From Podarcis melisellensis (lineage: Eukaryota): a stretch of 64,000 bases of DNA. The DNA is taken from NCBI GenBank assembly GCA_964234715.1, contig OZ174292.1, one strand, 5' to 3'. This document shows, one piece after another, positions 25,263 through 62,379 of the stretch (position 1 is its first letter; each line of letters starts with the position of its first letter). A program made the position numbers and the translations under genes. The notes beneath the pieces are model-generated. The model was not told where the DNA came from, did no database searches, and saw only the letters and a program-made list of their open reading frames with translations.

Positions 25263-25289
25263 ATGTTCAGTAGTATCATCATATTCCCA
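25263..25289 (-). CDS. PTPRD: PTPRD mini-exon meC (LASE-c equivalent), 27 nt, WEYDDTTEH
   Basis: aattag|TGGGAATATGATGATACTACTGAACAT|gtgagt; phase 0/0; matches the mammalian WEFDDTTEH insert; TGCATG about 95 nt downstream (25165-25170). Confidence 0.94.
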
Positions 25290-35935: not shown

Positions 35936-36614
35936 AACCCATCAACAATGAAATAATAATAATTCCTGACCATGGGTCACCCTGGCTGGAGCTGAAATGG
36001 AAGCTTTGAAGGGAATGTATTGTTATGAGTTTGGGGAGCAGGTAGGCTGTATGCTGGAGCCTGCTTCCAATTCCTGGATTTGGCACTGATTCAATTCCTG
36101 GAATGGACAGCTAGCTTTTATTTATACTTATGTCCCTATAAGTATGGACCGTTAAGGCAAGGAAGGGGCTCTGTGCCAGATGCCAAGTGAGTAGGGCCCC
36201 CCCTTCCTAACTCGCTGGGAGTTGGAAAGCCTGATTCCTGTTTGAATCAAAAACTGTGGCTAGAGGAGACCCTCTTGGGGTTTTCATGATGTAGTGGTGT
36301 TGAGTCAAAAGCGTAACTGTGCTCTCCAAGTTAAGGATCTCCAGTTAAGCCCTAATTATATTTCTGTATAGCTTACAATCAAAATATCAGTGTATCAATG
36401 TTTACTTTGCAAGGACTAGTATGCAGTGTTGGACTCTGCTGGTAAAAAGGGAGATTCAAATACTGACTCAACCATAAAGGGTACTGAGGTCTTGACAAAG
36501 TTATTATCCGTAATAACTTTGTTATTATAAACTTGATTCATGTGCTGCTTTAAAAAAAAATGTTTTTAATTTGTTTAATCTCCCCGTGAGAGCTGTGATT
36601 GTACTGGACAGGCA

Positions 36615-36667
<53 letters not shown>

Positions 36668-36716
36668 GGTTTTGGTGTCCTCGGGTGTCTTCCCGTGTAA
36701 AAGTTGGGGTGTCTAG

Positions 36717-36754
36717 GCGACGTTTCGACGAGGTCTCACTCGTCATCTTCAGGC
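36717..36754 (-). ncRNA. Minimal type I hammerhead ribozyme motif, sense to PTPRD pre-mRNA
   Basis: Reverse complement of the same motif. Confidence 0.8.
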
Positions 36755-36887
36755 TGGTGCTTTCGGCTTCTTGTTACTGGAACAGAGCAGGATCTCAGTG
36801 TTTGAGTTCCTATAAATACTGTTGAGGGGGTGTGGTGTATAGCCTCCAATGTTCTGGGCAGAGAGGAAGTTCCCAGGCTAGTGTGCT

Positions 36888-37951
36888 AATCCAAAAAGAA
36901 ACACCCCCCAAAAACCAAGACACAGAAGAAAACAATGGCATGGCCCTCCTTCCTTATATCAAGGGCACTACAGATAAAATTAGCAAAATCCTCCATAAAC
37001 ACAATATCAAAACAGCCTTTTGCACCAACCAAAAAATAGCCAATATCCTCAGAAACCCCAAGGATAAAATCCAGTTGGAAAACCAAGGGGTCTATGAAAT
37101 ACCCTGCAAAGTCTGCCCAGCCACGTACATTGGACAAACAAACAGACGAATAAATGCACGTATCGCAGAACACAAGAATGCCGTCAAAAAAGAAGAAAAA
37201 AACTTCCTCTCTTTTCCAACACATGAAAGAAACAGGACACGAAATTAATTTTGCAGATTCCAAATTGCTCTTTAACATGGAACATCACCACAAGAGAATA
37301 ATCATGGAAGCCATCGAGATAGAGAAACACCCTCACAACATGAACAAGCGTGACGACACATCCCGCTTGCCAGACATCTGGAAATTAGCCCTCCCCACAA
37401 AAACTGACACCAGATCCAGAGGCACACAGAACGCTATCACCAATCAACCACACCAGACCCAAACCCAGACCCTCTCCACAGATAAATTACAGACACCATC
37501 CAGTAGCCAAACCATGGTGGCACCTCCGGATGCTGCACCCCCCTGCAATCCCTACACAGATCTGGCTGACACAGGCCACAAAACCACAGCTCGCCCCTAT
37601 ACACGAAGCCAAGCCAGAGCACAACTAAGTGCAGTACAGCCATCTTCTCAGAAAAACTCTTCACAAAGTTCAAGAGGTCAAGACACAAAGACTTCAGCAA
37701 CTAATCCACACCTAATGACCCACCTAAGTGGTACTCAGGATATCACTCAAGAAATCACTCAAGATATCCCTCAAGTAATTAAGGAACAAAAGAAGAAAAG
37801 GCACACTAGCCTGGGAACTTCCTCTCTGCCCAGAACATTGGAGGCTATACACCACACCCCCTCAACAGTATTTATAGGAACTCAAACACTGAGATCCTGC
37901 TCTGTTCCAGTAACAAGAAGCCGAAAGCACCAGCCTGAAGATGACGAGTGA
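36888..37951 (+). pseudogene. Penelope-like ORF remnant (RT tail, GIY-YIG endonuclease, low-complexity C-terminus) with one frameshift in the A-run at about 37196-37202
   Basis: ORFs 36832..37248 and 37154..37951 join into one continuous GIY-YIG domain. Confidence 0.88.
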
Positions 37952-37970
37952 GACCTCGTCGAAACGTCGC
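37933..37970 (+). ncRNA. Minimal type I hammerhead ribozyme motif in pLTR
   Basis: gc-CUGAAGA-u-GACGAG-ugagac-CUCGUC-GAAACGUC^-gc; palindromic ACGU helix III. Confidence 0.8.
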
Positions 37971-38186
37971 CTAGACACCCCAACTTTTACACGGGAAGAC
38001 ACCCGAGGACACCAAAACCTGCATTCCTGTACCCGTGAAAATCTACGAAAGCAAATATATATATATATATATATACACATATATACATATATATATATAT
38101 ATATGCTTTCGTAGATTTTCACGGGTACAGGAATGCAGGTTTTGGTGTCCTCGGGTGTCTTCCCGTGTAAAAGTTGGGGTGTCTAG

Positions 38187-38224
38187 GCGACGTTTCGACG
38201 AGGTCTCACTCGTCATCTTCAGGC
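38187..38224 (-). ncRNA. Minimal type I hammerhead ribozyme motif, sense to PTPRD pre-mRNA
   Basis: Reverse complement of the same motif. Confidence 0.8.
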
Positions 38225-38434
38225 TGGTGCTTTCGGCTTCTTGTTACTGGAACAGAGCAGGATCTCAGTGTTTGAGTTCCTATAAATACTGTTGAGGGGG
38301 TGTGGTGTATAGCCTCCAATGTTCTGGGCAGAGAGGACATTGGAGGCTATACACCACACCCCCTCAACAGTATTTATAGGAACTCAAACACTGAGATCCT
38401 GCTCTGTTCCAGTAACAAGAAGCCGAAAGCACCA

Positions 38435-38472
38435 GCCTGAAGATGACGAGTGAGACCTCGTCGAAACGTCGC
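38435..38472 (+). ncRNA. Minimal type I hammerhead ribozyme motif in pLTR (identical copy)
   Basis: Same sequence as 37933-37970. Confidence 0.8.
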
Positions 38473-39100
38473 CTAGACACCCCAACTTTTACACGGGAAG
38501 ACACCCGAGGACACCAAAACCTGCATATATATATATATATATATATATATCCCTGACACACATGAGTACATAAGTAGGATGTGCTGGATTTCAAGTAGTT
38601 TTTCAATTTTTATTTTTATTTTAACAGGGCAGGGACGTTATATTCCAAGGAAGTTATATTCAGTGCGGAACTTTCATTTTTCATTAAATATTTGTCCTGT
38701 GAGCTCATTTATCATTACAAAAGCAGAATATGGAAATGGAGCTTCTGAAGGAACTTGAGAAAATTTCAACAATATATAACTATGTGATTAACATGCAAAT
38801 GGAAACAGCAAACAAACAAAGTTTCAGAGAGGCTGTTCATGGCATACGAACTGTTAAAGGTGAGTACAATACATAAAAATGTCAAAACTATTCATTACTG
38901 AATAAACTTCATGGTAAAGTCAAAAAACATAGATCCCCAATCCAACTCACAGCTTAGCCATCTGGATTTAGAATATGTTTTTGAAACACTTTAACTGGGT
39001 TCATCTATATGTACCTTTGACTTTATTGCTTAGAAAAGTCAGATACCAACCCTCCGACCCCAGCCGTACCGGTGAGAACTTTCTAGAGTTTTCCTCTTAC

Positions 39101-39682
39101 CTCCTGTCTGAGTGATGACTTGAATGTCACTAGAAAGAGGCCCATCACCAACGGAGGTAAAAGCAAGAACTTTCACAGAGTAAGTTTTCTGTGGTATTAG
39201 ATTCCCAATGGTGGTTATATGGCTGTCGGCCACATTATGTTTCAACCAGCTGTTGACATGTTGGGAGGGGTCCATGGTGTAATAAACTCTGTAGCCTTGT
39301 ATTTGTCCGTTGGGTTCCTCAGGTTCTTCCCACTGCACCAGTATTGTAGTTGAGCTCAACATACGGGCTTGTACATTGCGCGGTGCGCTAGACGGTGCTT
39401 GCTCTGAGGTCCGTGTTGAAACTGGTTCACTGGGTGGCCCCCGCCCAATGTTGTTGACAGCAACAACTCTGAACTCATACTCGGAATAAGGACTCAAACC
39501 GGCTACGCTGTATCGAGTTGTGGCGACTCCATCAATTTCCTTATAGAGTTCCTCAGAGTTTTTAGGTTTATGTTGGATTATGTAATAAGACACTGGCTCG
39601 GGGTTTCCAGAATCCCAAGTCAAAGTAATGCTTGTTGCTGTGCTTTCTGTTACAACAGGAGTTCCTGGAGGTTTGGGTAAGG
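39101..39682 (-). CDS. PTPRD: PTPRD exon, FN3 repeats 1-2 ([11 protein letters not shown]...QVITQTG), 582 nt
   Basis: Translation; acceptor ttgcag|CC, donor GGAG|gtaaga. Confidence 0.97.
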
Positions 39683-40037
39683 CTGCAAGAAAATAAAAGA
39701 CAATTTATTCAATTGGCAGGAAATTACACCACAGCACCATGACTAGTTTTTTTAAAAAGTATAGCAATGCGGTTTGGTGAAGGGACACATACAATTCAAA
39801 ACAGAATGCTGTTTTATTCAAGTATTGTCGAAAACAAAAACAAAATATTATGGGAAAAGCATTTTGTTGCGACAATAATTTAACTAAACATTTGCGAAGG
39901 AGAAAATTGATGTTGCTTTAAAATGGCAAGCAGCATCAGAGGCTTGGGGACTTTTGGTTCATATGCAGAAAATTTGTGTTGCCATGGTAAAGATTTATCT
40001 GTTGTTGTTTTTTTGAAGCAGATTGTATGCCCCTTAC

Positions 40038-40307
40038 CTTTCACAGTTATCTGTGCTATTGCTTCTATAACACCAAGAGTAGACATAGCAACACAAGTGT
40101 AATTTGCAGATTGCCTGACGTCATTTAGCTCCAGGACATTCCTTCCTATTGGCATGTCATCTTCCGGGGTAAGATCTTCTGCTCCCAGCATCCATTTCAC
40201 ATATGGCATTGGAGACCCCACAGCAACACAGGTGATGTTAACACTCCCTCCAGGCATAATTTCATGGTTGGTGGGTGGGATCGAAAACCTTGGTGGGACC
40301 CGACGAA
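40038..40307 (-). CDS. PTPRD: PTPRD exon, Ig3 ([12 protein letters not shown]...IAQITVK), 270 nt
   Basis: Translation; acceptor ttccag|TT, donor AAAG|gtaagg. Confidence 0.97.
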
Positions 40308-42337
40308 CTGGAATAAAACACACATAAAGCTAATAACCCATACAAAAATGGAGAACATAGATCTTGCACACAAGAATACATGCATTTGTAGATACACTTT
40401 CAACGATTAATTGCTACTTTTATTTGCCGAAAATAAAATATAGACCAGACAGGTATATTGTCTGTACATATTTGTTTACATTTATTCATCAATATCTTTA
40501 ACCACATTCATACAAAGCTTCCCCCCCCCACCCCAGACCTAGTAGGGCCTCACAATTAACTAACTATATACTAACAATACACCAAACACCATGCAAAAGA
40601 TACACACACATACACACACATATATATGCATGCATATTCTGTATGCATATGTATACATATATATGCACAGAAGAAAACTGGAGAGTCGACAGCATGCTTG
40701 AGTTGAGTATCAAAACCAACTTCAACGCTGCACACTTCCAGCTGATGTGAAGAAATGTGCTGCAACACATTGTCACATCACAGCCCTGAGACACATCACC
40801 TACGGTACACGGAAAAATGCAATTCTGATTTGCTGTCAGACTCAAAAAGTGGATGCAGCCTCAAGACCTCACACTAACACTGAAACAGACATGGGATATA
40901 TATAGATATATATATAGTCACAGGAGAAGAAACAAGGCAAAGCCAGTATGAGTACTGGTTTTGGTCATGCAGGCAAGCAAATGACAAGAGTCTATAGGGA
41001 ATCATGCTTAGGGAGGAATGATAGGAGAGAGAGAAACTGTATAGGGAAACAAAAACAATTAAAAGGAAAGGGAAAGGAAACATATTGGGATAGAGAATAG
41101 GTTTTTTTAAAAAAATGTGAAGGCAAGATAGTTTAAAAGAAACAGGGATATTAAGAGGGTAGGACAGAGAATAGGAGGATATTTGTTTAAGCTTGGGATT
41201 ATTATGAAGCAAGTATACGGTGGCAGGGAAGGAGAAGAACATTAAAACATTCCGGGTTCCATGGCGTTCACACAGAGGGGGAAGCAAAATAAGCTGCTAG
41301 GATTAATAATACTACTAAAAGCAGCTCTACGTGTACAAAATGAGGGACAGTGATATCTAAACTATTTAGCAGCAGGGCATTGCATTAACAGAGTAGTTAA
41401 TATTTAAGAAAACACAACACTGAGAAAATTACCAGGCAATAACAGATCAGTGTTCCTGCTTCAAATATTTTCTGTGTGCATGTGTGTGCATGTGTAGCGC
41501 AAGAGGCAACAGAGGCCTGTGCTTTCATTGCACACAATACGTTGTGCTTTACGGGGGCCTTCAAAACAAGGATGTCTTTGATTCAGCGAAATAAACAAAC
41601 CGATTCATAAATAAATGGCTACGGTCCCGGCCAGAGAACGTTAGTCATAATCACATCCCATTGAAATCAATGGGAGGTAGGTTAGTGGTCATTAAATCCA
41701 TCCACTGAAGTTAATGGCAGGGGGTGGGGAATGGTTTAGCGTTATACGCCGACAAGTGTGATTTAAGAGCGGCGAACTTTTGCTGGATTAAGGGGCTACG
41801 AATACAAAGCAATCATTTCATTACCCTTTGCAGTGAATCGAGATAAATTTCTAGAGATTCGATAGGGGCTTACGGTGATGGCCTCGTGAGTGAATGGGAC
41901 TGGCATAGGGAGGACAAAGAGCGAAACATGCCTTCAGCAGCCAATCAACCGAGGTCACGCAAAGCAAGTGAGGGGCAATGCAGAATTTGTAGTACTGAAA
42001 GAAAACGGAAAACGGAAAAAGAAAAAAAAAACTTAGGAGAAATATTAGTCTTCATGCTTGGGCTGCTTAAAGGAGCATCTGCTGGAACTCATTCCCGTAT
42101 CAGCAGGCATTAACAACGGAAATCAAAGGGAAATAAAATTGAAGAAGGAAAAGAAGATAAAAAGAAGCAGAAGCAGGAACACTGACCAGATTGACAACTC
42201 CTTGAAGTCTTAAGCGTGTTACTGGCTTGTCATGCACCCAGCCTCTCTCCCTCTGTCTACATGCACAACGATACCAGCACACATTAGAAGCCATGACCGG
42301 GGCATTCTCTGCTTAAACATAACATCAACTTAAAAAT

Positions 42338-42574
42338 NNNNNNNNNNNNNNNNNNNNNNNNNNNNNNNNNNNNNNNNNNNNNNNNNNNNNNNNNNNNNNN
42401 NNNNNNNNNNNNNNNNNNNNNNNNNNNNNNNNNNNNNNNNNNNNNNNNNNNNNNNNNNNNNNNNNNNNNNNNNNNNNNNNNNNNNNNNNNNNNNNNNNNN
42501 NNNNNNNNNNNNNNNNNNNNNNNNNNNNNNNNNNNNNNNNNNNNNNNNNNNNNNNNNNNNNNNNNNNNNNNNNN
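42338..42574. other. N-gap (237 nt), inferred position of mini-exon meB (ELRE)
   Basis: N run between the Ig2 and Ig3 exons; two TGCATG motifs downstream (42231-42236, 42260-42265). Confidence 0.6.
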
Positions 42575-43802
42575 CTTGTTCTAATCAAACCTTACTACCT
42601 CAGCTCTGACCGTAAGCAATTTCTCGCAGCTATCGCGGTATTAGGAACTAGCATCATTTGAGTGGGGAAAGGGGAACTCCTTCAAGTCGTAACGGCACAC
42701 ATGCCTCATGCAAGAAACACTACTTTGAAAGGAAAAGGACCAGATAGCTTCCTAAGGAGGCCAAAATAACCTCCGAACCCTTTCTAGTCAGAAAGCTAAA
42801 TCATAAATATATATTATCAAAGTTTTGTACAGCGTTCCCCACACCAAAGTAATGAGCTAACAGCTGTATGAACTGAAATCTTCCCTCATCTTTTTTCCCT
42901 CTCCTTCTCATTCCAAACCACCCTTTATTTTTGCAGGGAGATGGGATTATTTGTATAAATTATATAGAAAGGGGTGCTCTCATTTCAGAGCCAGACCCTA
43001 GAAACTGTGCCAGAAAGAAGCCACTTTAAATATATAAAACTAAGAGCTTCCATAGGTTTAAAAAGCAATCATGCCTGTTAGAATGTACTTTTTATGAATT
43101 TATCCTCCCAACTCATATCTATCAAAAAAGACAAATCTGTCTGCACCCCTCCCCCTTTTGAAAAATACAAAGAACAGCCAGTTCATTACAGCAGTGCCAG
43201 GGATTACGTATTACTGATAAAACTTCAATTTAAGAGTATGTATGTATATATATATATTTATAGCTCTACGAAACTAAGCTTAAAGAAACAGAGAAGGCAG
43301 GCCACACCACTGTCCTCTTCGGCGAGAATTTCCAAGCTAAGAACTTTTCCTTTTCAGCTCAGAAGCAGAGGTCATGTGGGTACAACATACCTCAGCACCC
43401 CGAGTTTCAATTAGAGCTAAATTAGTTGCACAGCAAGCAATCGCATTAGGAATTATAAACCAAAGAAAGGAGAAGAGGAAAACCCAAAAATAAATGCAAC
43501 GCTCAGGTCAATAGTCAATGCAGGAAAAAGTAGAAGTCAAGATGTAAAAACGGAAGCATACTTACAAACCTTAAGTCCACAGGGGTGGATTGGACTCAAA
43601 GGTGCCTTTATTCATATTCCTCCCCTTGTCAAATTCATACTCTAAGCCTTTTTTTCCCCAATGTTTATTTTCCTTTTCCCCCACCCCACCCCTTTGCCCA
43701 GATACTTTTGCTTATTACTGTAGTTATGGCATAGATCCCGAGAGTAACTTAATGCCCCTTGCGCCTGACTGAAGGGTAGATACCCGGGTTTATCATTCCT
43801 AC

Positions 43803-43913
43803 CTCTGACATATAGATTGGCAGGGGCAGAATACCGTGTCCCTGCACTGTTGGTTGCAACACACTCATATTTGCCTTGGTCAGATTCTTCGCTCAGTTCG
43901 ATTTGGAGGGCAC
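43803..43913 (-). CDS. PTPRD: PTPRD exon, second part of Ig2 ([37 protein letters not shown]), 111 nt
   Basis: Translation; acceptor ttacag|GT, donor AGAG|gtagga. Confidence 0.97.
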
Positions 43914-45613
43914 CTGTAAGGATATAAAATACATTGCCAAAGAGACTGTCAATGAAGGGTTTTTCAGCTCCCAACGACACACCGCTTAATAATAATGAAA
44001 AGCCCTGTATGCGGAGGTCCACTCAACGTCGGTTCATTTTCTCGCTACAGTGGCACAGACAAAAAAAATAAATTATGATGTGATGAAAAAAACAAAGAGA
44101 TTATTTTTTTCACACCATCAATGCTAGCACAGGAAAACAATCTGCATTTGGCAAACATATTTTCTAGCACAATATACTGTTTTCTCCTAGACTATTAAAA
44201 TGAAGATGGGTGAGACTGCTTCAAGGAAATATGGCTTTAAAACAAAGCATAGGATATTAGGTCATAGGGTTGTCACTGTTTAGCTGATTAGATTATTTTT
44301 TATTTATTTATTTGCGCAGCAAAAGTAATAATACAAAAGGTGGCACTCGGCAAAAAGAAGAAAAAAGAAGAAGAAAAAAGGGAGAAGATGGGTTTCAAGA
44401 AAGTCTTCCGCTGAAGAAGGCCAAAAATGTGCAGCGAGTACAAAAAAAGGGGCTGCTTAAAGTGAAAAAAGAAACAAATTAGTCATTTATAGTAATCAAA
44501 ATATTCCTTTAAAGAAACAAAACTCCCTTAAAGACATGCAGATTGGTAAGAAAAAGAAAGACATTTCGCCACAACTTACAATCGTTTTAGTGCATTTGCT
44601 GAAAAACAAGAGCAGTTGAATTAGGAGGCAAAAAAAATGTTAAAAAGCAGGGGCCAAGCCAACAAGGAAGAAGCAACCAATCACTGCTGGGGACCATCGG
44701 GATGTCAGCCCTAAGACACCCATCAAAATCCACGGCTGGGATTAGCAGTGTGGTGTCACAAAACCCAAGAAAAAAAACAAAACAAGAATTACAAAAGACA
44801 TGAGCAGTTGTTTTTTTTAATATAAAATGATTAAAAACCAGCAATACCACATTTTATCACCAAGAATACTGAGTCATCAACCTTTCCATTTCCAAAGCCT
44901 GAAGATCAGAAGGATCCAAAAATCCAGAGATGGGTAAATCCAAGAAGAAAAAATATATATATAGTTGCTGTAATTTATTAGGGAGAAGAATGTGGTGGGT
45001 TTTTTTCTTGTTGTTTTACTTTACTTTATTAAAGTTAAAAGAAAAATATATAATTGAACAAAAATAAAAAATAAAATAAACCCCCTTGAAAGACAAAGTT
45101 AAAAAGTAGATATTCCATGTTGTCGTCTGCATGTCTGCAACTGTTCTCCAGACCATCTTGGCTTGGTCCAAAACAAGAACAGCTAAGGAAGAAAAAAAAT
45201 GATCTTTTTTTTTTTGCTCCAGTTGGACCAAAAAAAAAGAAAGAAAAAAAGGGGAAAAAAAGAGAAAAGAAAAAAGGTAGAAAAAGAAGAAGAAAAAAAG
45301 GAATAGAGGGACAAATGGTACGCTGTGACTGGGTTGTGTGGCCTGAAGACCTGGATATGCTTTCTTTGAAGCATATCACAAAGTAACGAATCTTTTTTGA
45401 AAGAAAAAGAAGAAAAGAATGAATGAATGAATGAATAAACACAACTTTTTTTTCTTTTCAATGAAAAGTGAAAAGGATGGTGGTGAAAAAAACAAAACCA
45501 CAAGATGGAAGTCACTGATCAAAACTCAATAGGAAGAAATAAAGATGAAGGACATTTCTGTAATGCATTTGTTTGTTTTTTTAAAAAATGGATATTATGG
45601 AAGGTATGAAAGG

Positions 45614-45745
45614 NNNNNNNNNNNNNNNNNNNNNNNNNNNNNNNNNNNNNNNNNNNNNNNNNNNNNNNNNNNNNNNNNNNNNNNNNNNNNNNNNNNNNNN
45701 NNNNNNNNNNNNNNNNNNNNNNNNNNNNNNNNNNNNNNNNNNNNN
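45614..45745. other. N-gap (132 nt), inferred position of mini-exon meA6 (GGTPIR)
   Basis: N run preceded on the minus strand by a branch-point-like and pyrimidine-rich stretch ctctaatttgattcttcttcc; meA6 not found elsewhere. Confidence 0.6.
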
Positions 45746-46414
45746 AGGGCTTTGGAAGAAGAATCAAATTAGAGTTACAGAATTAAATAAGGTCTTAAAA
45801 GAAACTTGAATTTCTATACTGTAAAAACAGGAATATATACTTTTAGGTACAATTCTTAGATTATAAAAAACAAAATAGCAGTGTACCAAATTGGGCAAAG
45901 GCCATTATTTTCAGGGGGGAAGGGGCAAGGCAGATCATTCTTACAAGAGCTTAGGTGTTTGGTTATATAGGGTTAAAATATATATATTGCATAGGCCTGA
46001 AATCCTAAAAGAAAACCTTTACAACACTATATTTAATACATAGTTTAGGAAGAGATACTGGATAACTATTAAAGTGAGAAATATATATATATAGTATATG
46101 AAGATATATATATATATATAATAGAGAGAAATAGAGAGAGAGAAAGAGGCTATCTGGAAATAAATACTGATTATGTTGGACTCACTTGTCATATACTGCA
46201 CTACAGCTAAGTGATACTTGTGTATTGTTCCTTCTAACTTGAGAGTTACTAGGACTGATACGACAACATTTCTGTGAAGGGTTGTGTGTGTGCCGCTACA
46301 AAGGTCCGGTGGCTACACTGTCTGTTAGTAAAATGCATGCCATGCATTTTAAGAGTAATCATCATCATCATTATAATAATACCATAATCATAGTATTCTG
46401 CATATGAAAATTAG

Positions 46415-46578
46415 NNNNNNNNNNNNNNNNNNNNNNNNNNNNNNNNNNNNNNNNNNNNNNNNNNNNNNNNNNNNNNNNNNNNNNNNNNNNNNNNNNNNNN
46501 NNNNNNNNNNNNNNNNNNNNNNNNNNNNNNNNNNNNNNNNNNNNNNNNNNNNNNNNNNNNNNNNNNNNNNNNNNNNNN
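46415..46578. other. N-gap (164 nt), inferred position of mini-exon meA3 (ESI)
   Basis: N run; meA3 not found elsewhere between 43913 and 47684; TGCATG and TACTAAC motifs just downstream on the minus strand. Confidence 0.6.
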
Positions 46579-47683
46579 TGAAAATTGACTTCTAGTTTTA
46601 CATTAACAGAAGCTTAATCTACACAGTTCTGCTGACAACAAGCATTAGCAGTTGGTTAACAAGACTGGCTTAACATCACAGGACAGGTCAAAAAGGCTGA
46701 AAGTTCTGGGAAGATATATGGCTAGACAACTTGATTCCGCAAGAAGATCACTATCACAGCCGAAGTAGACTGCTAATTATATATCCCACCCTTTTGTAGT
46801 ATATTAATATGGGAATAAGATTTACATTTAGTAAATGATTTAGAGTTATCTTATTATGAAGCTGCAAAGACCATAAGGTGGAGTTGAAAGGAGTCATTGG
46901 AGAAAGAGCAGCGAAAGCCGGGCTCTACTTCAAATGCAGGCTTCTGTAGATCTGGACACGCTAATATTGACAAAGCTTTGGGTTTATGCACACTACTGTG
47001 GCTAAATGCACCAGAAAATAAATCTCAGCCAGTAAAAATCTCTCCCTTCACAGGCTAACCCATTGATTTGAGATTATTATTCTTGGTTGGCTTGCTTGCT
47101 TTGGGGTCAGGGAGGATGTTAAGATAGTGCACATGAGAAAAGTAGAGTGAGCCATGTACTAGTGAGAGAAACGGAAGATGTGTCCAAACTGTCTAATCTT
47201 TGGTGGATTCAAAACGTTGAAAAGAACTCACAAAACACCATTGTTATAGAATATTTTAATTGTCAAATAAAGAAAAATAGATTGGGTTTGATGGATATAA
47301 CCATTGGTACTCCTTGCATATTCTGAAGTCCAATGTTGAAATAACTTTTTTAAATAAAATAATAATAATATAGATAGGGATAGAGAGAATGGATCTGTCA
47401 AATACTGCCAAAAACGCAGTAAATAAACTGAAAATATCAAAACTACAGTCACAGCAAGTGAGCGTTGTGGAGTAAACAGATGCTGCAAAACACACAAACA
47501 AATAGACTCTGGAAACAGGCTATGACGATAACACAGACATGGACAACACGCTCGACAACATAAAAAAGAAGAAGAGAAGAAGAAATCATAACCTATAAAA
47601 TAAAATAAAAATAATTAAAAAGGAACGTAAAATAAGAGAGAGTATAATTTTGGGCATTAGTGCAAACAGTAACAAGACCTTAC

Positions 47684-47872
47684 CTGATCGTAATTGTTTG
47701 ATACGTCCATTGTTGTTGCTCGTGTCCACGGGTAAAAAATCTTTGAACCAAGTTATTTCAGGATCAGGATTCCCACTGGCTGCACATAACATGGTGGCCG
47801 TTCTAGTGCGTTCAACCACCTTTAATTGCGGGCCCATATCAATGGTGGGGAAACCACGAGGAATTTGATCCT
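47684..47872 (-). CDS. PTPRD: PTPRD exon, first part of Ig2 ([16 protein letters not shown]...GRIKQLRS), 189 nt, phase 1/1
   Basis: Translation matches PTPRD Ig2; acceptor tttttcag|AG, donor TCAG|gtaagg. Confidence 0.97.
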
Positions 47873-48725
47873 CTGAAAAAGAGATAAACATCAGGTTTAT
47901 AAAACATTTCCTATCACAGCTACATTTGCACATCCTCTAAATGTGTGTTCCAAACACACTGGGTTGCATCCATTGTCGTCACACAGCCATGAGTTAAGGC
48001 TTCCATCAGTGAAAAGGAGTTAGAAAGTTTTTTTGGTTTTGTGTGTCTGTGTGTGTGTGTTGCAATTTCTCCTCCTCCTCCTCCCTGCACTCTAATCCTC
48101 TGAATCTGGAGCCTTTCTAGATCAGATGAGGCAAAGGAGGGAGTTGGGTATCACTAAAAGATACGAAAAGATACTGACAAAAAGCTTCCAACTACATTGG
48201 TACCTTGGTTGTCCATCAACTTGGCTCCCAAACAAATTGGCTCCCGAACGCCGCAAACCCAGAAGTGAGTGTTTCTGTTTGTGAACGTTTTTTGGAAGCT
48301 GAACATCCGACACGGCTTCTGATTGAGTGCAGGAAGCTCCTGCAGCCAATCGGAAGCCACACCTTGGTTTTCGAATGGACTCCCGGAATGGATTAAGTTT
48401 GACAACCAAGGTATCACTGTATTGAGCAACACTGTTTAATACAACTAATTTTGTCTACGGTTAGAGAAAACGATTTCATCCTGGCGTGTGATCGCCAAGC
48501 ATAGTTTAAGCAAACCACGTCTTCCCAAGCTGGGATCTTTTGGAAGAGTCAGGATTGCTGACCCAGAGGTACAAATTCAAATCTCACTCAGGTGCATGGA
48601 AGCCTCTCTTAGGTGGCTATTTAGATCCATATCTGATTAAACAGGTATGATCAGAATAAGCATAGATCCATAACAAAAATGTCCAGACATGTATGGTGTT
48701 TGGGGGGGGGGGGTTTACTGCTTAT

Positions 48726-49429
48726 TGTTATGAGGGGGAAAAAACTTCTCCTTTTCCCTTATGGGGTACCCAAGGGTCCATATAGAGTCCTTTTGTAGGT
48801 TCCCTATTGGTAGGAGAAAATAACAGAGACCAACCAGAGAATATTGAGAAGCAAAGCAGCTAGTAAGCCTGATCTTTATTAGAGCTGTTGCAACAGGGTG
48901 CCCCCCTTACACGCAGGAGAGAGGAGGAGGACCCAGAGCCATGTGTGCAAGCCCTTATATAGACATTTTAAATTGCTCGCCCTGGAGTCCAAAACCACCC
49001 CCAGAAACATCATACATACCATACATCACAGAAGGTGTGTAGCCTAAGACCACCCCCAGATACATCATACCTACATCACAGAAAAGGCGGTCTACAACAG
49101 AATACTGAGTGTGTTGTTTATCTCCTGTCTGGCAAATTACCTGATTGCATTATCTGGGTTTTGGCCACTCTTTTGTTATTATAACTACTTAATTCCTGAC
49201 TCTAGGTCACAGGCTCACACCCTGTTCATATCTTGAATGTGCCCTTAAGACAGGATTTGTGAGGATGGGATTTGTGAGGAAAGAGACAATGGGGAGGTTT
49301 CCCACTTTGACCTAGCAGAGAAATATTTGAGGTGAATTTGTTCAGGACCTTTTCTGTGGGATTACAGACATGTGGTCTATGTATACAGTTATGAACATTT
49401 ATATATATAACGTTAAAATTCTTATAACA
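48726..49429 (-). mobile_element. Solo LTR (ERV- or Gypsy-type), 704 bp
   Basis: TGTTATGAG...CTTATAACA termini, 4-bp TSD TTAT, minus-strand TATATAAG (~48954-48961) followed by AATAAA (~48875-48880), U3-like direct repeats at ~48995-49085. Confidence 0.75.
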
Positions 49430-52400
49430 TTATAAAGGCTTCATTGATTATTTTTTTAAAGCAGTACAGCCATTTCTTATTTTGCTTCAAGACAACCCAC
49501 CAGGAGAAAGCAAAAAGGACCAATAACTGCCTTATAATGCATCCTTTGTTATTAAACATCTTGCTTGGCTGGTATTGACATGCAATTCTTTAAGGAATAA
49601 AAATAATTGACTACAAATTGTCCAATGTCAAACACATTACTTGCTTTGCCATGAAATGGTGTGATCTTTTCACAAAGTTGCAGCAAAGCTTTCGGAGGCA
49701 TCTGAAAAACTTGGAGGGATATCCTTGGATACTTGACAAATCTCTGCATTCCCTGGTGACTTCTTCCTCTCCAAGGCTATTTAATCACTGACAATGTGAA
49801 TGCACATAAATATTGCTACCGGAGAGTGGTAGTCACTAATCTTCTGCAAGTGTGAATGTCTTTTTATCTCTGCCAATAAGCAGGAAGTGTTAAAGGCTGA
49901 CAATGTTAGGCCATTTGCTATAGGCTCTTACCAAAGAAACCTACATTAGATAACAAATTATAAGATGTGAAGCCTTTACCTTGGGAATTGCTGATAAGGT
50001 TTGACTTGTGCCATGCTGAAGTACTACTCTAATGCATTTGCATGACCTTTCCATTTCCTTCTTGGCTCACAAAGAACACTCTAGAGGGCCCTTTCTCATA
50101 TAAACAAGCACACAACAAAGATAATCTATCTTGCATACTAATAGGGTGGAGTAAGCAAAGAGCTTCTCTCTCTTATTTTTAATAAGGGTAATTAAATTCT
50201 ATCCATTCCTCTTATGCACAGAACCTCTCCAAATACACGCTCGTCATTAAATTTTCATGAGAAACATCACAATGTAACAGATTCAAATAGTCAGAGCTGT
50301 TATACTTTGACAGTTGTGGCTTATTTCCAATCTGGCTGTCAGGTATTTGGCAATAAAACCCAGTATTCAACATAAAACGGACTGGGGAAAATAATGGAAT
50401 TTGTAATTGGAATGCTTATCTCAGTGGGTGTAGTTTATAAGACGTTAATTGCTTTCTGTTCTACTTTAAATTTATTAGTTATTTCTACAAAACCTGTCTT
50501 TCCAGTTTGATGGCACCATGTTTGACAGATCATCAAACAAGATGAACAATCACATCAATCAGCAATTATACTACAGCCACATATAGTTTTTTGGGGTTGG
50601 GTGAGGGGAATAGCTAGTAATCAATACATTTTAAATTTTAAACATTAACATGAAGTGAAGAGAAAAAACATTTTGTCTTCTTCACTTGTTTGTACATTAC
50701 TGTCATCATTAGGATTTTAACTACAATGTCCACCACTTTTCATTTTAATGTTGTCATGCTGAATTAGCTAGTAATTCATCAACAATTTAAATCAGACCTG
50801 ACCTTCCCAGAGCCATATGACAGTGTCATTTTTACAGGCCATTAAAGGGCAGATTACTGTGCTCAGGGAGCAATATGAGTAATGTACGTATTTGTTTATG
50901 GTGGCAGCTACAAGAAATTTGGAAACATGACATATTCTTAGCATTTGCAAGGTGTCTTGCTAGTAAATATGTTCTGCTACTAAATTTCTAATTCAGTTCC
51001 AGGGATGTATCCGTAGCAGTCCATCAAGCTGAAGAGTTCCGAGGATGAATTTTGAACCAGATTAAGAATCTTTAAGGGAAAACACCACAACACTGTCTTG
51101 CATGGGGTTCAGCTGTGTTTATATTATGTTTTCAGAAGGTGTGCTCCACAGTTTTTTAACAGACTTATCTCTTATCCAAACACAAGAAATTAGTACCCAA
51201 ACCTCGCTATACACATCACAGATTCAAATATCCAAACAGCTGGACCTGTGTGTAGTACTGTAAACAGATAAGAAGCCTTAAACAAATCTTACTTTTTTGT
51301 GTTTTGCTGGTCTACCGCAACTGTTTCACCAGAAACCATGGTGGAAGGGAGGAAGGGGAAGAGCTCAGACCCGCTAAGAGAGAATTTCTTACTTCCTTGT
51401 TTGCCTTTTGCAAGGTTTTACAGGCTTTCCCTGGGGTTTTCCAGGTTGCCTGCTCACTTTGGGGTCAACATTCCATGGTTGGGAATGCATTAGAAATTTT
51501 CCCATAGGAAACCAGTCACCAACTCTTTAAGCCATGGGCAGGCAAACTAAGGCCTGGGGGCCAGATTCGGCCCAATTGCCTTCTAAATCCGGCCCGCAGA
51601 TGGTCTGGGAATCGGTGTGTTTTTACATGAGTAGAATGTGTCCTTTTATTTAAAATGTATCTCTGGGTTATTTATGGGGCATAGGAATTCATTCATATAT
51701 ATTTTTCAGAATATAGTCCAGCCCCACAAGGTCTGAGGGACAGTGGACCGGCCCCCTGCTGAAAAAGTTTGCTGACCCCTGAATGTTTGCACAACAAATG
51801 GTTTTCTGGGAATGTATTGTGTTCAGATAGCAAGACCTGCATGCACTGACAATGCTATGCAGAAATCATTTACTTGGTGCATTTGTAATTTACAGAACCT
51901 TATCTGCCTTCACAATCTAATTTGCAGCTTTAGTCAATAAATGCACAGACTAGATTCTCCCAATCTACACAAAAACAAATATTGAACAAGGCAGTGATTC
52001 AGTCCCCACCGATTCTTTATAAAGGTTGAAACTCACTGCAAATTTTGAATGCATAAAAGGTCTGCTCAGATTATCCAGAAGGTAAATGTTCTTCAGGTAT
52101 GTGACCACGTATTTGAGCTTTTCGAACTCTGCTACTTCCCAGTTTTTCTCCTTCCTTCAGTTTGGGCAGAAAAATTGGAAGATGTAGCTTTTTTTAAAAA
52201 AAGTGTTGACATGCAAAAGGCTCACTAAAACTTCTGGTTTTCACACTTCCAGGTACCCAAAGGGAAACTCACACAGCAGTTATGCAATCGGTCTCCATAC
52301 CCTGTAAGTACATTACACATTGTTGCTGAGATTGCGTTCCCTCTGAAGAATGAGATACAGATGTTGGAGGTACTGTACTCCTGGATACATTTTTGACTCT

Positions 52401-53629
52401 AGAGGCCCAAATATCCAGAGGTTAGAAGTATATTCTACCAGCTTTATCTGTTTCACCAGCTGCATTGATTACTGGACATTAGCAACCACAAGACTGGATT
52501 ACAGTGGTACCTCAGGTTACATACGCTTCAGGTTACATACGCTTCAGGTTACAGTCTCCGCTAACCCAGAAATAGTGCTTCAGGTTAAGAACTTTGCTTC
52601 AGGATGAGAACAGAAATCGTGCTCCTGCGGCACGGCGGCAGTAGGAGGCCCCATTAGCTAAAGTGGTGCTTCAGGTTAAGAACAGTTTCAGGTTAAGAAC
52701 AGGCCTCCGGAACGAATTAAGTACTTAAGCTGAGGTACCACTGTGCTGCAATGTGTTCTGTGAGGGGAAGGATCATTTGATATCCATGTCAATCCAAGCT
52801 TTCACTGTTATTGGCCCAGTCTTGAAGACTGCTCTTCCAATAGAAAATCAGCAGGCATCTCCAGCACTGATTTTTAAATTTTGCTGAAATCTTTTCTATG
52901 GTGCCAGTCTTATGTGCACAATTAAAGAAGCAATTCTGTTACAATTACCCAGTTATCTTTGCTATTGCTTTTTTTTGTAGGATATATAGATAGAAAGATA
53001 GATATCATACAATGCTTCTGTGTTTTTTTATGAAATTGTAGTATTTAAGTATTTTTATGAATCAAAGAAATTACGTATCATTCCAACCACTTTACTAAAA
53101 TGCACTGCGAAAACATGAGGAGACAATGAAGCTACCCATATATACTACTAAAAGAAATTGCCATCCATCTATCACACACTATTGTTATACTCTAGACAGC
53201 AATCTGGCTCTGACCCTTGTTGCAAACTCCCACTTGAGGCTCTCACCAAAGGGGGGGGGGAATCAAACTGTGCCCCAACTCACTAGTACCTCCTTCCCTC
53301 TCAACCAGTAGTGGCCTCAGATGTTCTAATCCACATAACCCACACTCCACAAAGAAATAATAAAGCAATGATTGCCGCAATCGCAAAGGTAGAACACAAA
53401 AGGACAACCACCTCTTTGGGTAACTTTAGGGTAGCACATCTCAGTAATGATGGCTTTGTGGGCTTTCTGTCCAAATGTCAATTAACAATTATATCTAGTC
53501 TACCAGCTCCATCTGGTACGCAGGATGAGATCCTAGCTGCCTGCAGATTGTCTCACCAGAGTGGTACTTTGAGTGTAATACTTTTAATCATTTCCCTCCA
53601 AGGAGTTCAATACAGAGGACTCTGAACCC

Positions 53630-53950
53630 ACAGAACCACAGAATTACAGGTCATCTAGTCAAATTCCCTGAAATGCAGGAATCACAGCTAAAATATCCAT
53701 GATAGATGGGCACCCAACATCTGCTTAGAAACCTCAAAGGAAGGAGAGTTCACCACTTTCTGAGGGAGTCCGTTCCACTTTTGAACAGCTCTACTATCAG
53801 ATAGTTGTTCCTAATGTTTAGTAAGAATCTCCTTTCTTGTATCTTGAATCCATTGGTCCAGGTCCTACCCTCTGGAGCAGCAGAAAACGATCTTAGCTCC
53901 ATCTTCTGTGTTACAGCCCTTGGACAATGACTATACAGATCCTCTCAGTC
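53630..53950 (-). mobile_element. CR1-like LINE 3' fragment
   Basis: ttctgtg repeat tail and CR1-type 3' sequence. Confidence 0.55.
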
Positions 53951-54563
53951 TCCTATCAACCCTGTTAGGCTGAGAACCTCACTGCTAGGTGAGAATTTGA
54001 GGCTGGGTGTCCCACAAGTCCTAGTCCAAGTTTCTAACCACTTACAGAACTCTGGGTGTCACTACACTGAATGCATGGATGTCTTTTTGTTGATATGGAA
54101 GAATGGGTAGAAAAAACAAGATAAAAGAAAAGTGATTAGGAGTACCTAAAATGAAAGTTAAAATGTGTTTGAGGTAGCTTCTCTAATTTGAATGATACTA
54201 GTACCTCTAGTTTGCATGTTATTACCCATTCTACTTCTGCTCACATTCATGGAAACGGTTTCTGCATAAAGTGCTGTAGCCAGCAATTAAGAGCCTTTGT
54301 TTGCATTAGCTTTTGTTTGCACCAGTGTCCTTCTGCAAGTTTTGAATTAAAGTAACAAATGATTAAGGCAGTCATTTGTGATAAAATACAAACAGAAGAC
54401 AGAGCACAAAGCATGTTCTAGTCCGGGTGGGGAAAGCAACAATTTTGCTTCTTCTAGCAATTGATATTAGGATTATTATTTTTCTGCTCTGATGTCTCAC
54501 ATACAAAGCAGTACCTGAAATAAATATTGGGCTGAAGGAGGATTTTAAGGTTGAATATGGATA

Positions 54564-54879
54564 CAGGGCCGTCTCACCCATAGGGGCTAGGGGTGCGGGT
54601 CACGTGGGTCCTGGGCTCTCAGGGGCGCCAGGCCAAGAGTCTGGGGCTGAGCATTGGAGTCCATGGAAGAGCTCGCCAGTCGGTCAAAGTGCCACAGTGG
54701 GCTCTTCTGCTGTGGGCGGCTCTGTGCCGCAAGTTCAGGGGTGACCAAGCCAGCGAGACACAGGCTGCTGGCTGGTTCCTTCCTAGTGCGCACCTGGGAC
54801 TGGGCAACGGGGTGTGTGTGTGTGTGCACGCCGGGCAGATCTTTGCACCCCGGTGCCACATATGCTTAAGATAGCCCTG
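54564..54879. mobile_element. GC-rich hAT-type MITE
   Basis: TIR CAGGGC.GTCT; perfect 8-bp TSD tatggata. Confidence 0.8.
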
Positions 54880-56740
54880 TATGGATATTGGCTGTCAGAT
54901 TCCTCCAAGAAAACCTGAATATCTGTCCTTCACAATCAAGGCACTAAACTTGAGGGCACTAAAATGTGCTACCCAGGGCTATTTTTTTCCAGAAGAAAGA
55001 GGTGCCAGAACACCTCCCCCATTCCCTTAATGGCAATGGTGCCCACCTGAGAGGTTAGAAAAATGGGTTCTCACGAGTTCCAGCTGAAAAAGGCCCTGTT
55101 ACCCAAATGCAAGATACCTGTGCAGTTAGCATAAATCAGTCATGAACTCCAACAGACAGACTTTTTGCTAAGAATGTACAAATCTGCATGATCAAAAGAA
55201 ATGCATTAAGTAATAGGAATTATGTGTTCGCTGTCCAAAAGCCCTTGATAGTTACTATGTAACTAGAACACTGAACTTGCAGAAATCAGCAGTATTAAGG
55301 AACCGCCCCTGAAAAATAATAACTTTAAAAGTTACATCTGATAACCCTAATAAAGCATATATATTCCAAATTTCTGGCAATAATTCTTTCTAACAGACAA
55401 AAATTACCCAGAAACTATACACAACAGCAAGGGTGCAAAACAGAGACGAGGTGCAAGAGGCAAGGAAATGAAATATAGATGTAAACAGATTGTTATTATT
55501 CATAGTCTGCTGTGTGAAGTGTTTATTTCATATGTAATTGTATTATTTTTAAATTGTTCTGCACCATTTTGATACATTTTATGAAAGGCAGTCCTGAAAT
55601 CTTTTAATAGACAAATAATACCTTTGAAATCGTCGATGCTACTCAGGTTCACATTGTAGTAAAATGCCCTGCAGTGTACGCGTTCTCTATTAGGGTTAAG
55701 TATTCCGCCTGCTAAACTTCAATGTAATAAAGGCTCATTTGAAATAATGGGAGGCTCACCGGTGTACATGGTTGAGAGTGGTATAAATTATTCATGACAG
55801 ATTTCATGGTCAAATTGTAATCATATTGGAAATTTCACAGTTTGTTATGGATTAACCGGAGAAAGCAAATGCATAATGTGGACATGGATGCCTTTCCCAG
55901 AGAACAGTGTGGCATTGTAAAAAGAAAAAAAAAAAAAGAAAAACCCACAAAGAGTTGAAGCATCTATTTTTAAGTGAAGTATGTTAGTTATTCAGAGCAC
56001 TAAAAACTCCCCACCGCCGCTGCCACCAACATCACCATTTTTAATCTAGCAGCTGCTTCTCAACTGTTTCTGACAGGAACCAAAATAAACCTGACAAGAT
56101 CACGTTTTAATATATTTTGCATTAAAAATGCATCAGAAACACACTGGCCAGATACCACCACCTTGCCTGCCTGCCTTTCTGCATTGCCTTGAGGAAAGAG
56201 AAGGTTCAATTTCTGGTCATTCTTTCCATAACTCCAGTGGCACCATCTTGAGGTCTGTCAAAGCAGCAATTTCCGCCTCTGGAGAAAGGACCAGAGAGTA
56301 CTGCATCCCACAGCAGTTCTCTAGCAGCCCATTAAAGAATGATTCTGGTTTTGTTTGTTTCCCCGCCCCCCCCCTCTCCCTAAGAGAGTTGCTTCTTTCT
56401 TAGAAATAAGAATGCTGACTTGCTAGGCTTCTTACAAAAAGCAGGTCTCAAGTGTCAAAAAATAAAGAGGACAGAATCCAAGAGTGATCCAAAACAAAAC
56501 AAATCCCCTATGTGGAATGCATCCAGAGCATGGGTAGGCAAACTAAGGCCCAGAGGTCGGATCCAGCCCAATCAGCTTCTCAATCCGGCCTGTGGACAGA
56601 CTAGGAATCAGCATGTTTTTACATGAGTAGAACGTGCCCTTTTATTTAAAATGCATCTCTGGGTTATTTGTGGGGCATATGAATTTGTTCAATTTTTTTC
56701 TTCAAAATATAGTCCAGCCCCCCAAAAGGTCTGAGGGACA

Positions 56741-56895
56741 GGGACAACAGAGGACGAGATGGTTGGACAGTGTTCTCGAAGCTACTAATTTGAGTTTGAC
56801 CAAACTGCAGGAGGCAGTGGAAGACAGCAGTGCCTGGCTTGCTCTGGTCCATGGGGTCACAAAGAGTCGGACATGACTAAATGACTTGACAACAA
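56741..56895 (+). mobile_element. BovB 3' end fused to a truncated hAT MITE (~56528-56740)
   Basis: QRTRWLDSVLEATNLSLTKLQEAVED...HGVTKSRT; similar to the reverse complement of 61321-61470. Confidence 0.85.
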
Positions 56896-57370
56896 TAGAA
56901 GGGCCCTGCGGGACTTGACATCTTTCCGCAGGGCCTGAAAGACAGAGCTGCTCCGCCTTTGGTCAGGGCACAGCCTGACTCCCTCCTTTGGCAATCTTCT
57001 CAGAACTCTAGCCCAATGGTTGCCATCAATTTGATTTGAAGTATTTTTTTAATGAAATGATTTTAGAATGTTGTATTATTTTATTGTTGTTAGCCGCCCT
57101 GAGCCCGGCTTCGGCTGGGGAAGGCGGGATATAAATAAAAAATTATTATTATTATTATTAACAACAACTGACCAATCATGTCAGTTCTGCTCCCCAAACC
57201 AAGTCCTGCCTCCCCCCACAAAAATCCTGGCTACACCATTGCATGGCAGGGTCATCAAATGCTATAAAAAGGGCAGACTATTCTTGACAACACGTTTAAA
57301 GCTTTTCATACATCCTCTTTAGCACACTTAAATTGCACGCTGATGCACAATAAAAGAAGTGAAACCAATC

Positions 57371-57580
57371 NNNNNNNNNNNNNNNNNNNNNNNNNNNNNN
57401 NNNNNNNNNNNNNNNNNNNNNNNNNNNNNNNNNNNNNNNNNNNNNNNNNNNNNNNNNNNNNNNNNNNNNNNNNNNNNNNNNNNNNNNNNNNNNNNNNNNN
57501 NNNNNNNNNNNNNNNNNNNNNNNNNNNNNNNNNNNNNNNNNNNNNNNNNNNNNNNNNNNNNNNNNNNNNNNNNNNNNNNN
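57371..57580. other. N-gap (210 nt) in non-repetitive intronic sequence
   Basis: N run. Confidence 0.9.
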
Positions 57581-59579: not shown

Positions 59580-60228
59580 ACAGCATCAAAATGCCCATTT
59601 ACACCACAAAGAACTCATAACCCAGCTACTTTCAGCAGCCAGAAACACCATAACAAGACACTGGAGAGACCTGTCAGGAGTAAGCATGGACCAATGGTAC
59701 CAAATAGTATGGGAAACAGCCCTACTAGAAAAATTAACTAATAAACTGAAACTGACACGGGGACAAACAGAAGAAGACACCTTCACCCCGGTATGGCTCT
59801 CCTTTATCACATACACAGCCCAACAGGACAATGACAATAATCCACCAACAGCATACAAATCAATATGGCTAACCTGATCCAAAACACCCACCCACCTCAC
59901 TCACACACAAAAACAAAGATCACCACAGCCAATCACAAACAAACAATCACACCCTAGGCCAACCCCAACCTAGCACACCACTAAAGGAACACAAGTGAAC
60001 AACGCAAGCACGCTGACACCAAACTCTACATACATTAAGCATAATAGAAACACCACTACCCGACTCCACCCCCTTTCTTTTTTTTCTTTTTTTTTCTTCT
60101 CCCCCTAATGTCTCAACAAATGAAATGTTGAAAAATGAAAAATGTTACATGGGGGGCGGGGGGAATACGAGGCATTACACTTACCTCTGTAAAACAAGAA
60201 AACCCTTAATAAAATATTTATTAAAAAA
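59580..60228 (+). mobile_element. L1-like LINE 3' end (ORF2 C-terminus, 3' UTR, AATAAA, A-tail)
   Basis: QWYQIVWETALLEKLT...FTPVWLSFITY pattern typical of L1 ORF2 ends; poly(A) signal at ~60208. Confidence 0.65.

Positions 60229-62332: not shown

Positions 62333-62378
<46 letters not shown>
62333..62378. repeat. (TAT)n microsatellite
   Basis: Direct reading. Confidence 0.95.

Positions 62379-62379
<1 letters not shown>

What the first reader, a model, noticed from the sequence alone, without database searches (positions are those of the whole stretch)
42338..46578. Three N-gaps sit where mini-exons meA3, meA6 and meB belong
Seen: every large exon and meC is readable, but meA3, meA6 and meB are not. 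Irregular gaps of 164, 132 and 237 nt lie in unique sequence in the right introns, in the right number and order, with splice-regulatory flanks. Ordinary assembly gaps fall in repeats, yet the difficult Penelope palindrome here is fully assembled. Inference: these blocks were masked after assembly, plausibly because they are nearly identical to mammalian DNA and were flagged as contamination. If so, N-runs in this assembly mark highly conserved elements, and its annotation will falsely lack the microexons.
Basis: partly seen in the sequence, partly recalled or inferred. Interest (0 to 1): 0.7.

Follow-up and report, generated by a model that had tools for sequence, protein, structure and literature searches.

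The report
Masked PTPRD microexons, not assembly gaps

Summary
The window carries PTPRD on the minus strand. The exons for Ig2 (first part), Ig2 (second part) and Ig3 are readable, have intact splice sites, and are 97-100% identical in protein to solved PTP-delta structures.

- **Placement.** The intron that should hold meA3 and meA6 contains two N-runs (164 and 132 nt). The intron that should hold meB contains one (237 nt).
- **No readable microexons.** No readable DNA in the window encodes GGTPIR or ELRE, and none encodes a junction-compatible ESI.
- **Not ordinary gaps.** The N-run flanks are unique, with no repeats and no overlap artefact. Near-perfect 256-nt palindromes and microsatellites elsewhere in the window are fully assembled.

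My best reading (about 0.75) is that the N-runs are deliberate masks over stretches nearly identical to human DNA. They would hide the microexons together with their conserved splicing-control flanks. The masks probably come from this scan's own data preparation.

Caveats:
- A readable in-phase "ESI" 9-mer at 47508-47500 is probably a decoy.
- No reads could be used.

Other readers noted the same pattern in several other windows of this genome. The biology is already known, so interest is low.

The parts
46415..46578 (-). N-run of 164 nt, first in the Ig2a-Ig2b intron, 1105 nt after the Ig2a donor. Presumed mask over microexon meA3 (9 nt) and its conserved flanks.
Evidence: Two GCATG motifs lie 70-75 nt downstream at 46345 and 46340.
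45614..45745 (-). N-run of 132 nt, second in the Ig2a-Ig2b intron, 669 nt after the first and 1700 nt before Ig2b. Presumed mask over microexon meA6 (18 nt) and its flanks.
   Evidence: The last 60 nt of the upstream flank are 68% pyrimidine. Content not read.
42338..42574 (-). N-run of 237 nt, the only one in the Ig2b-Ig3 intron, 1228 nt after the Ig2b donor and 2030 nt before Ig3. Presumed mask over microexon meB (12 nt) and its flanks.
   Evidence: GCATG motifs at 42711, 42704, 42264 and 42235. PMC13080001 reports that the intron upstream of meB is conserved over about 1.3 kb.
57371..57580 (-). Fourth N-run of 210 nt, 9.5 kb upstream of Ig2a and not part of the finding. Content unknown: it may hide the second Ig1 exon or a conserved non-coding element.
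47684..47872 (-). PTPRD exon for the first part of Ig2 (189 nt, phase 1 at both ends).
   Evidence: 62 of 62 residues identical to PTP-delta chains, at chain residues 99-160. Matches Pfam I-set profile positions 1-44 of 90.
43803..43913 (-). PTPRD exon for the second part of Ig2 (111 nt, phase 1 at both ends).
   Evidence: 35 of 36 residues identical to PTP-delta. Chain residues 171-206, 165-200 or 162-197, depending on the splice form crystallised. Matches I-set profile positions 58-83.
40038..40307 (-). PTPRD exon for Ig3 (270 nt).
   Evidence: 89 of 89 residues identical to PTP-delta, at chain residues 212-300, 203-291 or 202-290.
25263..25289 (-). Microexon meC, readable: 27 nt, AG acceptor, GTGAGT donor, phase 0.
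47500..47508 (-). Readable 9-nt AG/GT candidate that codes E-S-I in phase, 175 nt after the Ig2a donor. Probably a decoy.
   Evidence: Chance of such a candidate is 0.8% per simulated intron. Its last base is T, which would give Cys instead of the conserved Gly at the next junction, and its donor (GTTTGT after TTT) is very weak.

Best explanation
The three N-runs are deliberate masks. Each was laid over a short stretch (132-237 nt) that is nearly identical to human DNA. They are not places the assembler failed to read.

Under them lie the three neuronal microexons of PTPRD: meA3 (9 nt) and meA6 (18 nt) inside the Ig2 domain, and meB (12 nt) in the Ig2-Ig3 hinge. Each sits with roughly 60-110 nt of deeply conserved intronic splicing-control sequence on either side. 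In the animal these exons are presumably spliced in or out in neurons, as in mouse, to set which postsynaptic partners PTP-delta binds.

Shown here: the gene identity, the exon map, the splice phases, the placement, number and order of the N-runs, the absence of the microexons from readable DNA, and the uniqueness of the flanks.

Inferred: what lies under the N-runs, that the masking criterion is likeness to human DNA, and that the mask was applied by this scan's data preparation and not by the assembly's authors.
For: Gene and junctions. The exons flanking the N-run introns are 97-100% identical to solved PTP-delta chains. Between splice forms, those chains differ by exactly 0, 3 or 9 residues at the Ig2a/Ig2b junction and by 0 or 4 at the Ig2b/Ig3 junction. 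This is seen in the chain numbering of 5xnp, 7ceg, 4yfg and 4rca.

Splice phases. All three exons are in phase 1, so inserts of 9, 18 or 12 nt keep the reading frame.

Placement. Two N-runs lie in the meA intron and one in the meB intron, P = 0.002 under random placement.

Absence from readable DNA. No GGTPIR or ELRE coding string exists anywhere in the window, and no ESI candidate has the required final G.

Flanks. They are unique, share no 12-mer across an N-run, and are not in any repeat family. The N-runs sit in the longest repeat-free stretch of the window, 12,978 nt.

Hard sequence is assembled elsewhere. This includes 256-nt palindrome arms that are 99% complementary with a 6-nt spacer, and (TA)25, (CT)25 and (ATT)15 microsatellites.

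Lengths. The four lengths (132, 164, 210, 237) are not standard fixed gap sizes.

Splicing motifs. GCATG is about 5-fold enriched within 200 nt of the N-runs.

Literature. meA3, meA6 and meB encode 3, 6 and 4 residues. The intron upstream of meB is conserved over about 1.3 kb in mammals (PMC13080001), and here the readable distance from Ig2b to the N-run is 1228 nt. meA and meB also exist in zebrafish ptprd (PMC12626420).

Operators and earlier notes. Several other windows of this genome carry notes of irregular N-runs in conserved DNA. Those notes are unchecked leads.
Against: - The letters under the N-runs were not read and could not be, so the content is inferred from position only.
- A readable, in-phase ESI-coding 9-mer with AG/GT exists at 47508-47500, and such a candidate arises by chance in only 0.8% of simulated introns.
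- meC and all the large coding exons are also highly conserved, yet they are not masked. The masking criterion must therefore be stricter than protein conservation, for example long exact nucleotide matches. I could not test this.
- The fourth N-run has no assigned element.
- The '4 mod 8' length rule noted in another window fits only 2 of the 4 N-runs here.
- Who applied the mask is not shown by any tool result.
Confidence: 0.75

Rival explanations
1. The masks are in the public assembly itself. A contamination screen or the submitters replaced lizard DNA that is near-identical to mammalian DNA with N. The public annotation of this species would then lack these microexons and other ultraconserved elements.
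For: All the positional evidence for the best explanation applies equally. Other windows of the genome show the same pattern, which fits any genome-wide masking step.
Against: The tool descriptions say human-like reads are dropped and that some stretches of the collections are masked, which points to this scan's own pipeline. No tool result shows N-runs in the public record.
Confidence: 0.1
2. The N-runs are ordinary scaffold gaps of estimated size that fall in these two introns by coincidence. The microexons are simply unassembled.
For: The scan program's generic note calls them assembly gaps of estimated length. Irregular lengths do occur in mate-pair or optical-map scaffolds.
Against: Random placement gives the 2+1 arrangement with P = 0.002. 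The flanks are unique and show no repeat, low-complexity or overlap artefact. Much harder sequence in the same window is resolved, namely near-perfect palindromes and long microsatellites. Four gaps within 15 kb of unique DNA would be odd for an assembly of that quality.
Confidence: 0.07
3. At least one N-run hides a different conserved intronic element, such as a splicing silencer or enhancer, and not a microexon. meA3 would then be the readable 9-mer at 47508-47500, or meA3 and meA6 would share one N-run.
For: An in-phase AG-N9-GT candidate codes E-S-I, has a good pyrimidine-rich acceptor, and arises by chance in only 0.8% of simulated introns. Mouse work shows conserved intronic enhancer and silencer regions around meB that are separate from the exon (PMC13080001).
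Against: The last base of the candidate is T. Splicing it to meA6 or to Ig2b would give Cys where Gly is invariant. Its donor matches the consensus only at +1, +2, +5 and +6. The region around it is not masked, so it is not human-like, whereas conserved microexons normally carry conserved flanks.
Confidence: 0.08

Closest known systems
PTPRD (PTP-delta) microexons meA3, meA6 and meB of mouse and human
   Same: Same gene: the flanking exons are 97-100% identical in protein. The two insertion points are the same, inside Ig2 and at the Ig2-Ig3 hinge. The splice phases are the same. There are two sites in the first intron and one in the second, in the same order (PMC13080001, PMC12598525).
   Different: In this window the exons themselves cannot be read, so their presence in the lizard is inferred from position and from their conservation as far as zebrafish (PMC12626420).
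Hard-masking of sequence by a data pipeline (letters replaced by N on purpose)
   Same: N-runs of irregular length in unique DNA, flanks otherwise intact, co-located with deeply conserved elements, and recurring across the genome according to other readers' notes.
   Different: The masking rule, its author and whether the lengths are exact are not shown by any result here. The lengths fit the '4 mod 8' rule proposed elsewhere in only 2 of 4 cases.
Ultraconserved elements and conserved flanks of neuronal microexons
   Same: Short blocks (130-240 nt) around alternatively spliced neuronal microexons, lying in a repeat-free zone of about 13 kb and with Rbfox-type GCATG motifs nearby.
   Different: Identity to mammalian DNA could not be measured. 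meC, also a conserved microexon, is not masked.

Membership tests
PTPRD Ig2/Ig3 microexon cassette (meA3, meA6, meB) | Host gene is PTPRD, with Ig2 split into two exons followed by an Ig3 exon | tested here: met
   Exon peptides are 62/62, 35/36 and 89/89 identical to PTP-delta chains. The Pfam I-set profile is split at positions 44/58.
PTPRD Ig2/Ig3 microexon cassette (meA3, meA6, meB) | Two insert sites between the Ig2a and Ig2b exons and one between the Ig2b and Ig3 exons | tested here: met
   Two N-runs lie in the 3770-nt intron and one in the 3495-nt intron. Solved chains differ by 0/3/9 and 0/4 residues at exactly these junctions.
PTPRD Ig2/Ig3 microexon cassette (meA3, meA6, meB) | Flanking exons share a phase, so inserts of 9, 18 and 12 nt keep the reading frame | tested here: met
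   All junctions are in phase 1. Direct joining gives Gly and Val as in the insert-free isoforms.
PTPRD Ig2/Ig3 microexon cassette (meA3, meA6, meB) | Actual 9-, 18- and 12-nt exons with AG/GT that code the 3-, 6- and 4-residue peptides | not testable with these tools
   They are absent from readable DNA, apart from a flawed ESI candidate at 47508-47500.
PTPRD Ig2/Ig3 microexon cassette (meA3, meA6, meB) | Neuron-specific alternative inclusion | not testable with these tools
GCATG enrichment near two of the N-runs is only suggestive.
   Position fits three known conserved microexons. The fourth N-run is unassigned, and identity to human could not be measured.
   This needs reads or another copy across the N-run.
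Ordinary scaffold gap | Flanked by repeats, low complexity or duplicated ends, or has a standard fixed length | tested here: not met
   No shared 12-mers across the N-runs and unique flanks. Lengths are 132, 164, 210 and 237. Palindromes and microsatellites elsewhere are assembled.

The most novel reading that the evidence does not exclude
The N-runs are in the public assembly itself. Some screening step removed lizard DNA that is near-identical to mammalian DNA. The public record and its annotation would then systematically lack ultraconserved microexons and non-coding elements, and comparative studies using it would score them as lost.
Probability: 0.1. Interest if true: 0.45.

Novelty: not a real feature. 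Interest (0 to 1): 0.12.

Why it matters
The main value is a reading rule for this scan. In this genome, short irregular N-runs in unique DNA mark masked, human-like (deeply conserved) elements and not assembly failures. Exons that look missing and genes that look unknown around such N-runs are products of the mask. The biology underneath, the PTPRD meA/meB splice code for synaptic partner choice, is well described in mouse and zebrafish. A lizard copy adds only one more vertebrate with the expected gene layout. It would matter more only if the masks turned out to sit in the public assembly.

Tried and rejected
For the record, the whole-window Rfam scan was sent after that and included this stretch.
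2. The '4 mod 8' N-run length rule from another window fits only 132 and 164 here, not 237 or 210. It is no support.
3. UCUCU and UGC enhancer motifs are not enriched in the readable flanks, as expected if the exon-proximal 50-100 nt are masked.
4. Rfam gave no match at gathering score anywhere in the window, so no known RNA gene explains the N-runs.
5. A search for Ig1 exons upstream of Ig2a found none readable, so the fourth N-run stays unassigned.
6. Loss of the microexons in this lineage is rejected as unlikely, because they are conserved as far as zebrafish.
7. The ESI candidate at 47508-47500 is probably not meA3. It ends in T, which would give Cys in place of Gly, and its donor is poor.
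Each exon was searched on its own, by reference.
Full report
**What is there.** The window has four N-runs: 42338-42574 (237 nt), 45614-45745 (132), 46415-46578 (164) and 57371-57580 (210). The first three are the finding.

**The gene.** A stop-to-stop translation of the minus strand shows a long series of PTPRD-like exons, from the first half of Ig2 down to the juxtamembrane exon. I set three exon borders by eye and by script.
- Ig2a is 47872-47684 (189 nt).
- Ig2b is 43913-43803 (111 nt).
- Ig3 is 40307-40038 (270 nt).

Each has an AG acceptor preceded by a pyrimidine tract and a GT donor, and all are in phase 1.

**Gene identity and the missing residues.** I searched each exon on its own, by reference, against solved structures. 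The peptides are 62/62, 35/36 and 89/89 identical to PTP-delta chains, and PTP-sigma and LAR score lower. The chain numbering is informative without reading any hidden letters.

| Chain | Ig2a | Ig2b | Ig3 | Unaccounted at Ig2a/Ig2b | Unaccounted at Ig2b/Ig3 |
|---|---|---|---|---|---|
| 4rca, 4yfd, 4yh7 | 99-160 | 171-206 | 212-300 | 9 residues + split-codon Gly | 4 residues + split-codon Val |
| 5xnp | 99-160 | 162-197 | 203-291 | 0 | 4 |
| 7ceg, 4yfg | 99-160 | 165-200 | 202-290 | 3 | 0 |

These are the published splice forms. meA3, meA6 and meB encode 3, 6 and 4 residues. meA lies inside Ig2 and meB lies in the Ig2-Ig3 hinge (PMC13080001; PMC12598525). Pfam agrees: the I-set profile is split between positions 44 and 58 across the Ig2a/Ig2b junction.

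**Continuity across the N-runs.** This is the test the scan's program asked for first. All three N-runs are intronic, and no PTPRD-like coding sequence abuts any of them. The exons on both sides are on the same strand and in the order of the protein. Their phases match, so direct joining gives Gly and Val as in the insert-free isoforms. The two 400-nt flanks of each N-run share no 12-mer, so there is no overlap or duplication artefact. Whether each N-run has the true length of what it hides could not be tested.

**Placement.** The Ig2a-Ig2b intron (47683-43914, 3770 nt) holds two N-runs. They lie 1105 nt after the Ig2a donor, then 669 nt apart, then 1700 nt before Ig2b. The Ig2b-Ig3 intron (43802-40308, 3495 nt) holds one, 1228 nt after the Ig2b donor and 2030 nt before Ig3. 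Four N-runs placed at random in 64 kb give this 2+1 arrangement with P = 0.002. In mouse, the intron upstream of meB is reported as conserved over about 1.3 kb (PMC13080001). A meB about 1.3 kb after Ig2b would fall inside the 237-nt N-run.

**Are the microexons readable anywhere?** No string coding GGTPIR, ELRE plus Val, or Ser-ESI-Gly exists on either strand of the window.

A looser scan for AG-N-GT mini-exons in phase found one candidate. It is a 9-mer at 47508-47500 that codes E-S-I, 175 nt after the Ig2a donor, behind a strongly pyrimidine-rich stretch. Only 0.8% of first-order Markov simulations of this intron contain such a candidate, so it should not be ignored.

Two things count against it. 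Its last base is T, so splicing to meA6 or to Ig2b would put Cys where Gly is invariant. Its donor matches the consensus only at +1, +2, +5 and +6. I take it for a decoy and give about 0.08 to the rival that includes it.

**Gaps or masks?**
- The flanks are ordinary, unique, AT-rich intron. No tandem repeat touches an N-run. Almost no flank 16-mer recurs in the window.
- The three N-runs sit in the longest stretch of the window that is free of within-window repeat families, 38551-51528 (12,978 nt).
- Sequence that is truly hard to assemble is resolved in the same window. This includes nested palindromes at 36639-38550, with arms of 193-256 nt that are 99-100% complementary and 6-8 nt apart, as well as (TA)25, (CT)25 and (ATT)15.
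- The lengths 132, 164, 210 and 237 are not standard fixed gap sizes.
- GCATG motifs (Rbfox-type) are about five-fold enriched within 200 nt of the three N-runs: 6 seen against 1.14 expected, nominal P = 0.001. They occur only around the 237- and 164-nt N-runs. UCUCU and UGC are not enriched.

Together these results speak for masks over conserved elements and against assembler failure.

**Who masked?** No tool result settles this. The tool descriptions say human-like reads are dropped and that some stretches in the collections are masked.

Other first-stage notes on this genome report irregular N-runs in conserved, unique DNA in several windows, including FOXP2 introns and an ARX-block element. 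One follow-up concluded that N-runs covered human-like coding parts of an ordinary gene. These are unchecked AI notes. I use them as leads only.

The one claim of theirs I could test here is that lengths are 4 mod 8. It fits two of the four N-runs. I conclude that the masks most likely come from this scan's data preparation. I leave 0.1 for that version.

**Mechanism of the biology underneath (from the literature, not tested here).** Alternative inclusion of meA3, meA6 and meB yields eight PTP-delta ectodomain forms. The inserts reshape an Ig2 loop and the Ig2-Ig3 hinge, and so select postsynaptic partners (IL1RAPL1, IL1RAP, Slitrks, SALMs, neuroligin-3). Inclusion of meB is driven by upstream intronic UCUCU/UGC enhancers and is reduced by neuronal activity through an intronic silencer (PMC13080001, PMC12598525). 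meA and meB also exist in zebrafish ptprd (PMC12626420). The lizard layout (same junctions, same phases, and conserved blocks in the same order) is what one expects for an ordinary vertebrate PTPRD.

**What I could not do.** I made no further reads requests and did not use read laying.

**Verdict.** The N-runs are a data-handling effect over already known biology, so interest is low.

Noticed in passing
window 57371-57580: A fourth N-run (210 nt) lies 9.5 kb upstream (minus strand) of the Ig2a exon in unique DNA, with a GCATG 15 nt from its upstream edge. No Ig1 exon is readable anywhere in 47873-64000, so it may hide the second Ig1 exon or a conserved non-coding element.
   Followed up: partly
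window 47500-47508 (minus strand): A readable AG-N9-GT candidate codes E-S-I in phase, 175 nt after the Ig2a donor, behind a long pyrimidine-rich tract (47660-47510). Chance is 0.8% per simulated intron. It ends in T (which would give Cys in place of Gly) and has a very weak donor.
   Followed up: yes
window 36400-38800: The nested palindrome is fully assembled, with arms up to 256 nt, 99-100% complementary and 6-8 nt apart. cmscan finds no hammerhead family there at E up to 1. It finds only sub-threshold look-alikes of miRNA hairpin models on both strands.
   Followed up: partly
window 38551-51528: This is a 12,978-nt stretch free of every within-window repeat family. It spans FN1 to Ig2a and the three N-runs. 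Elsewhere, repeat copies recur every 1-8 kb.
   Followed up: partly
window 25263-25289 (minus strand): Microexon meC is readable (27 nt, phase 0, strong GTGAGT donor) and is not masked, unlike meA3, meA6 and meB.
   Followed up: yes
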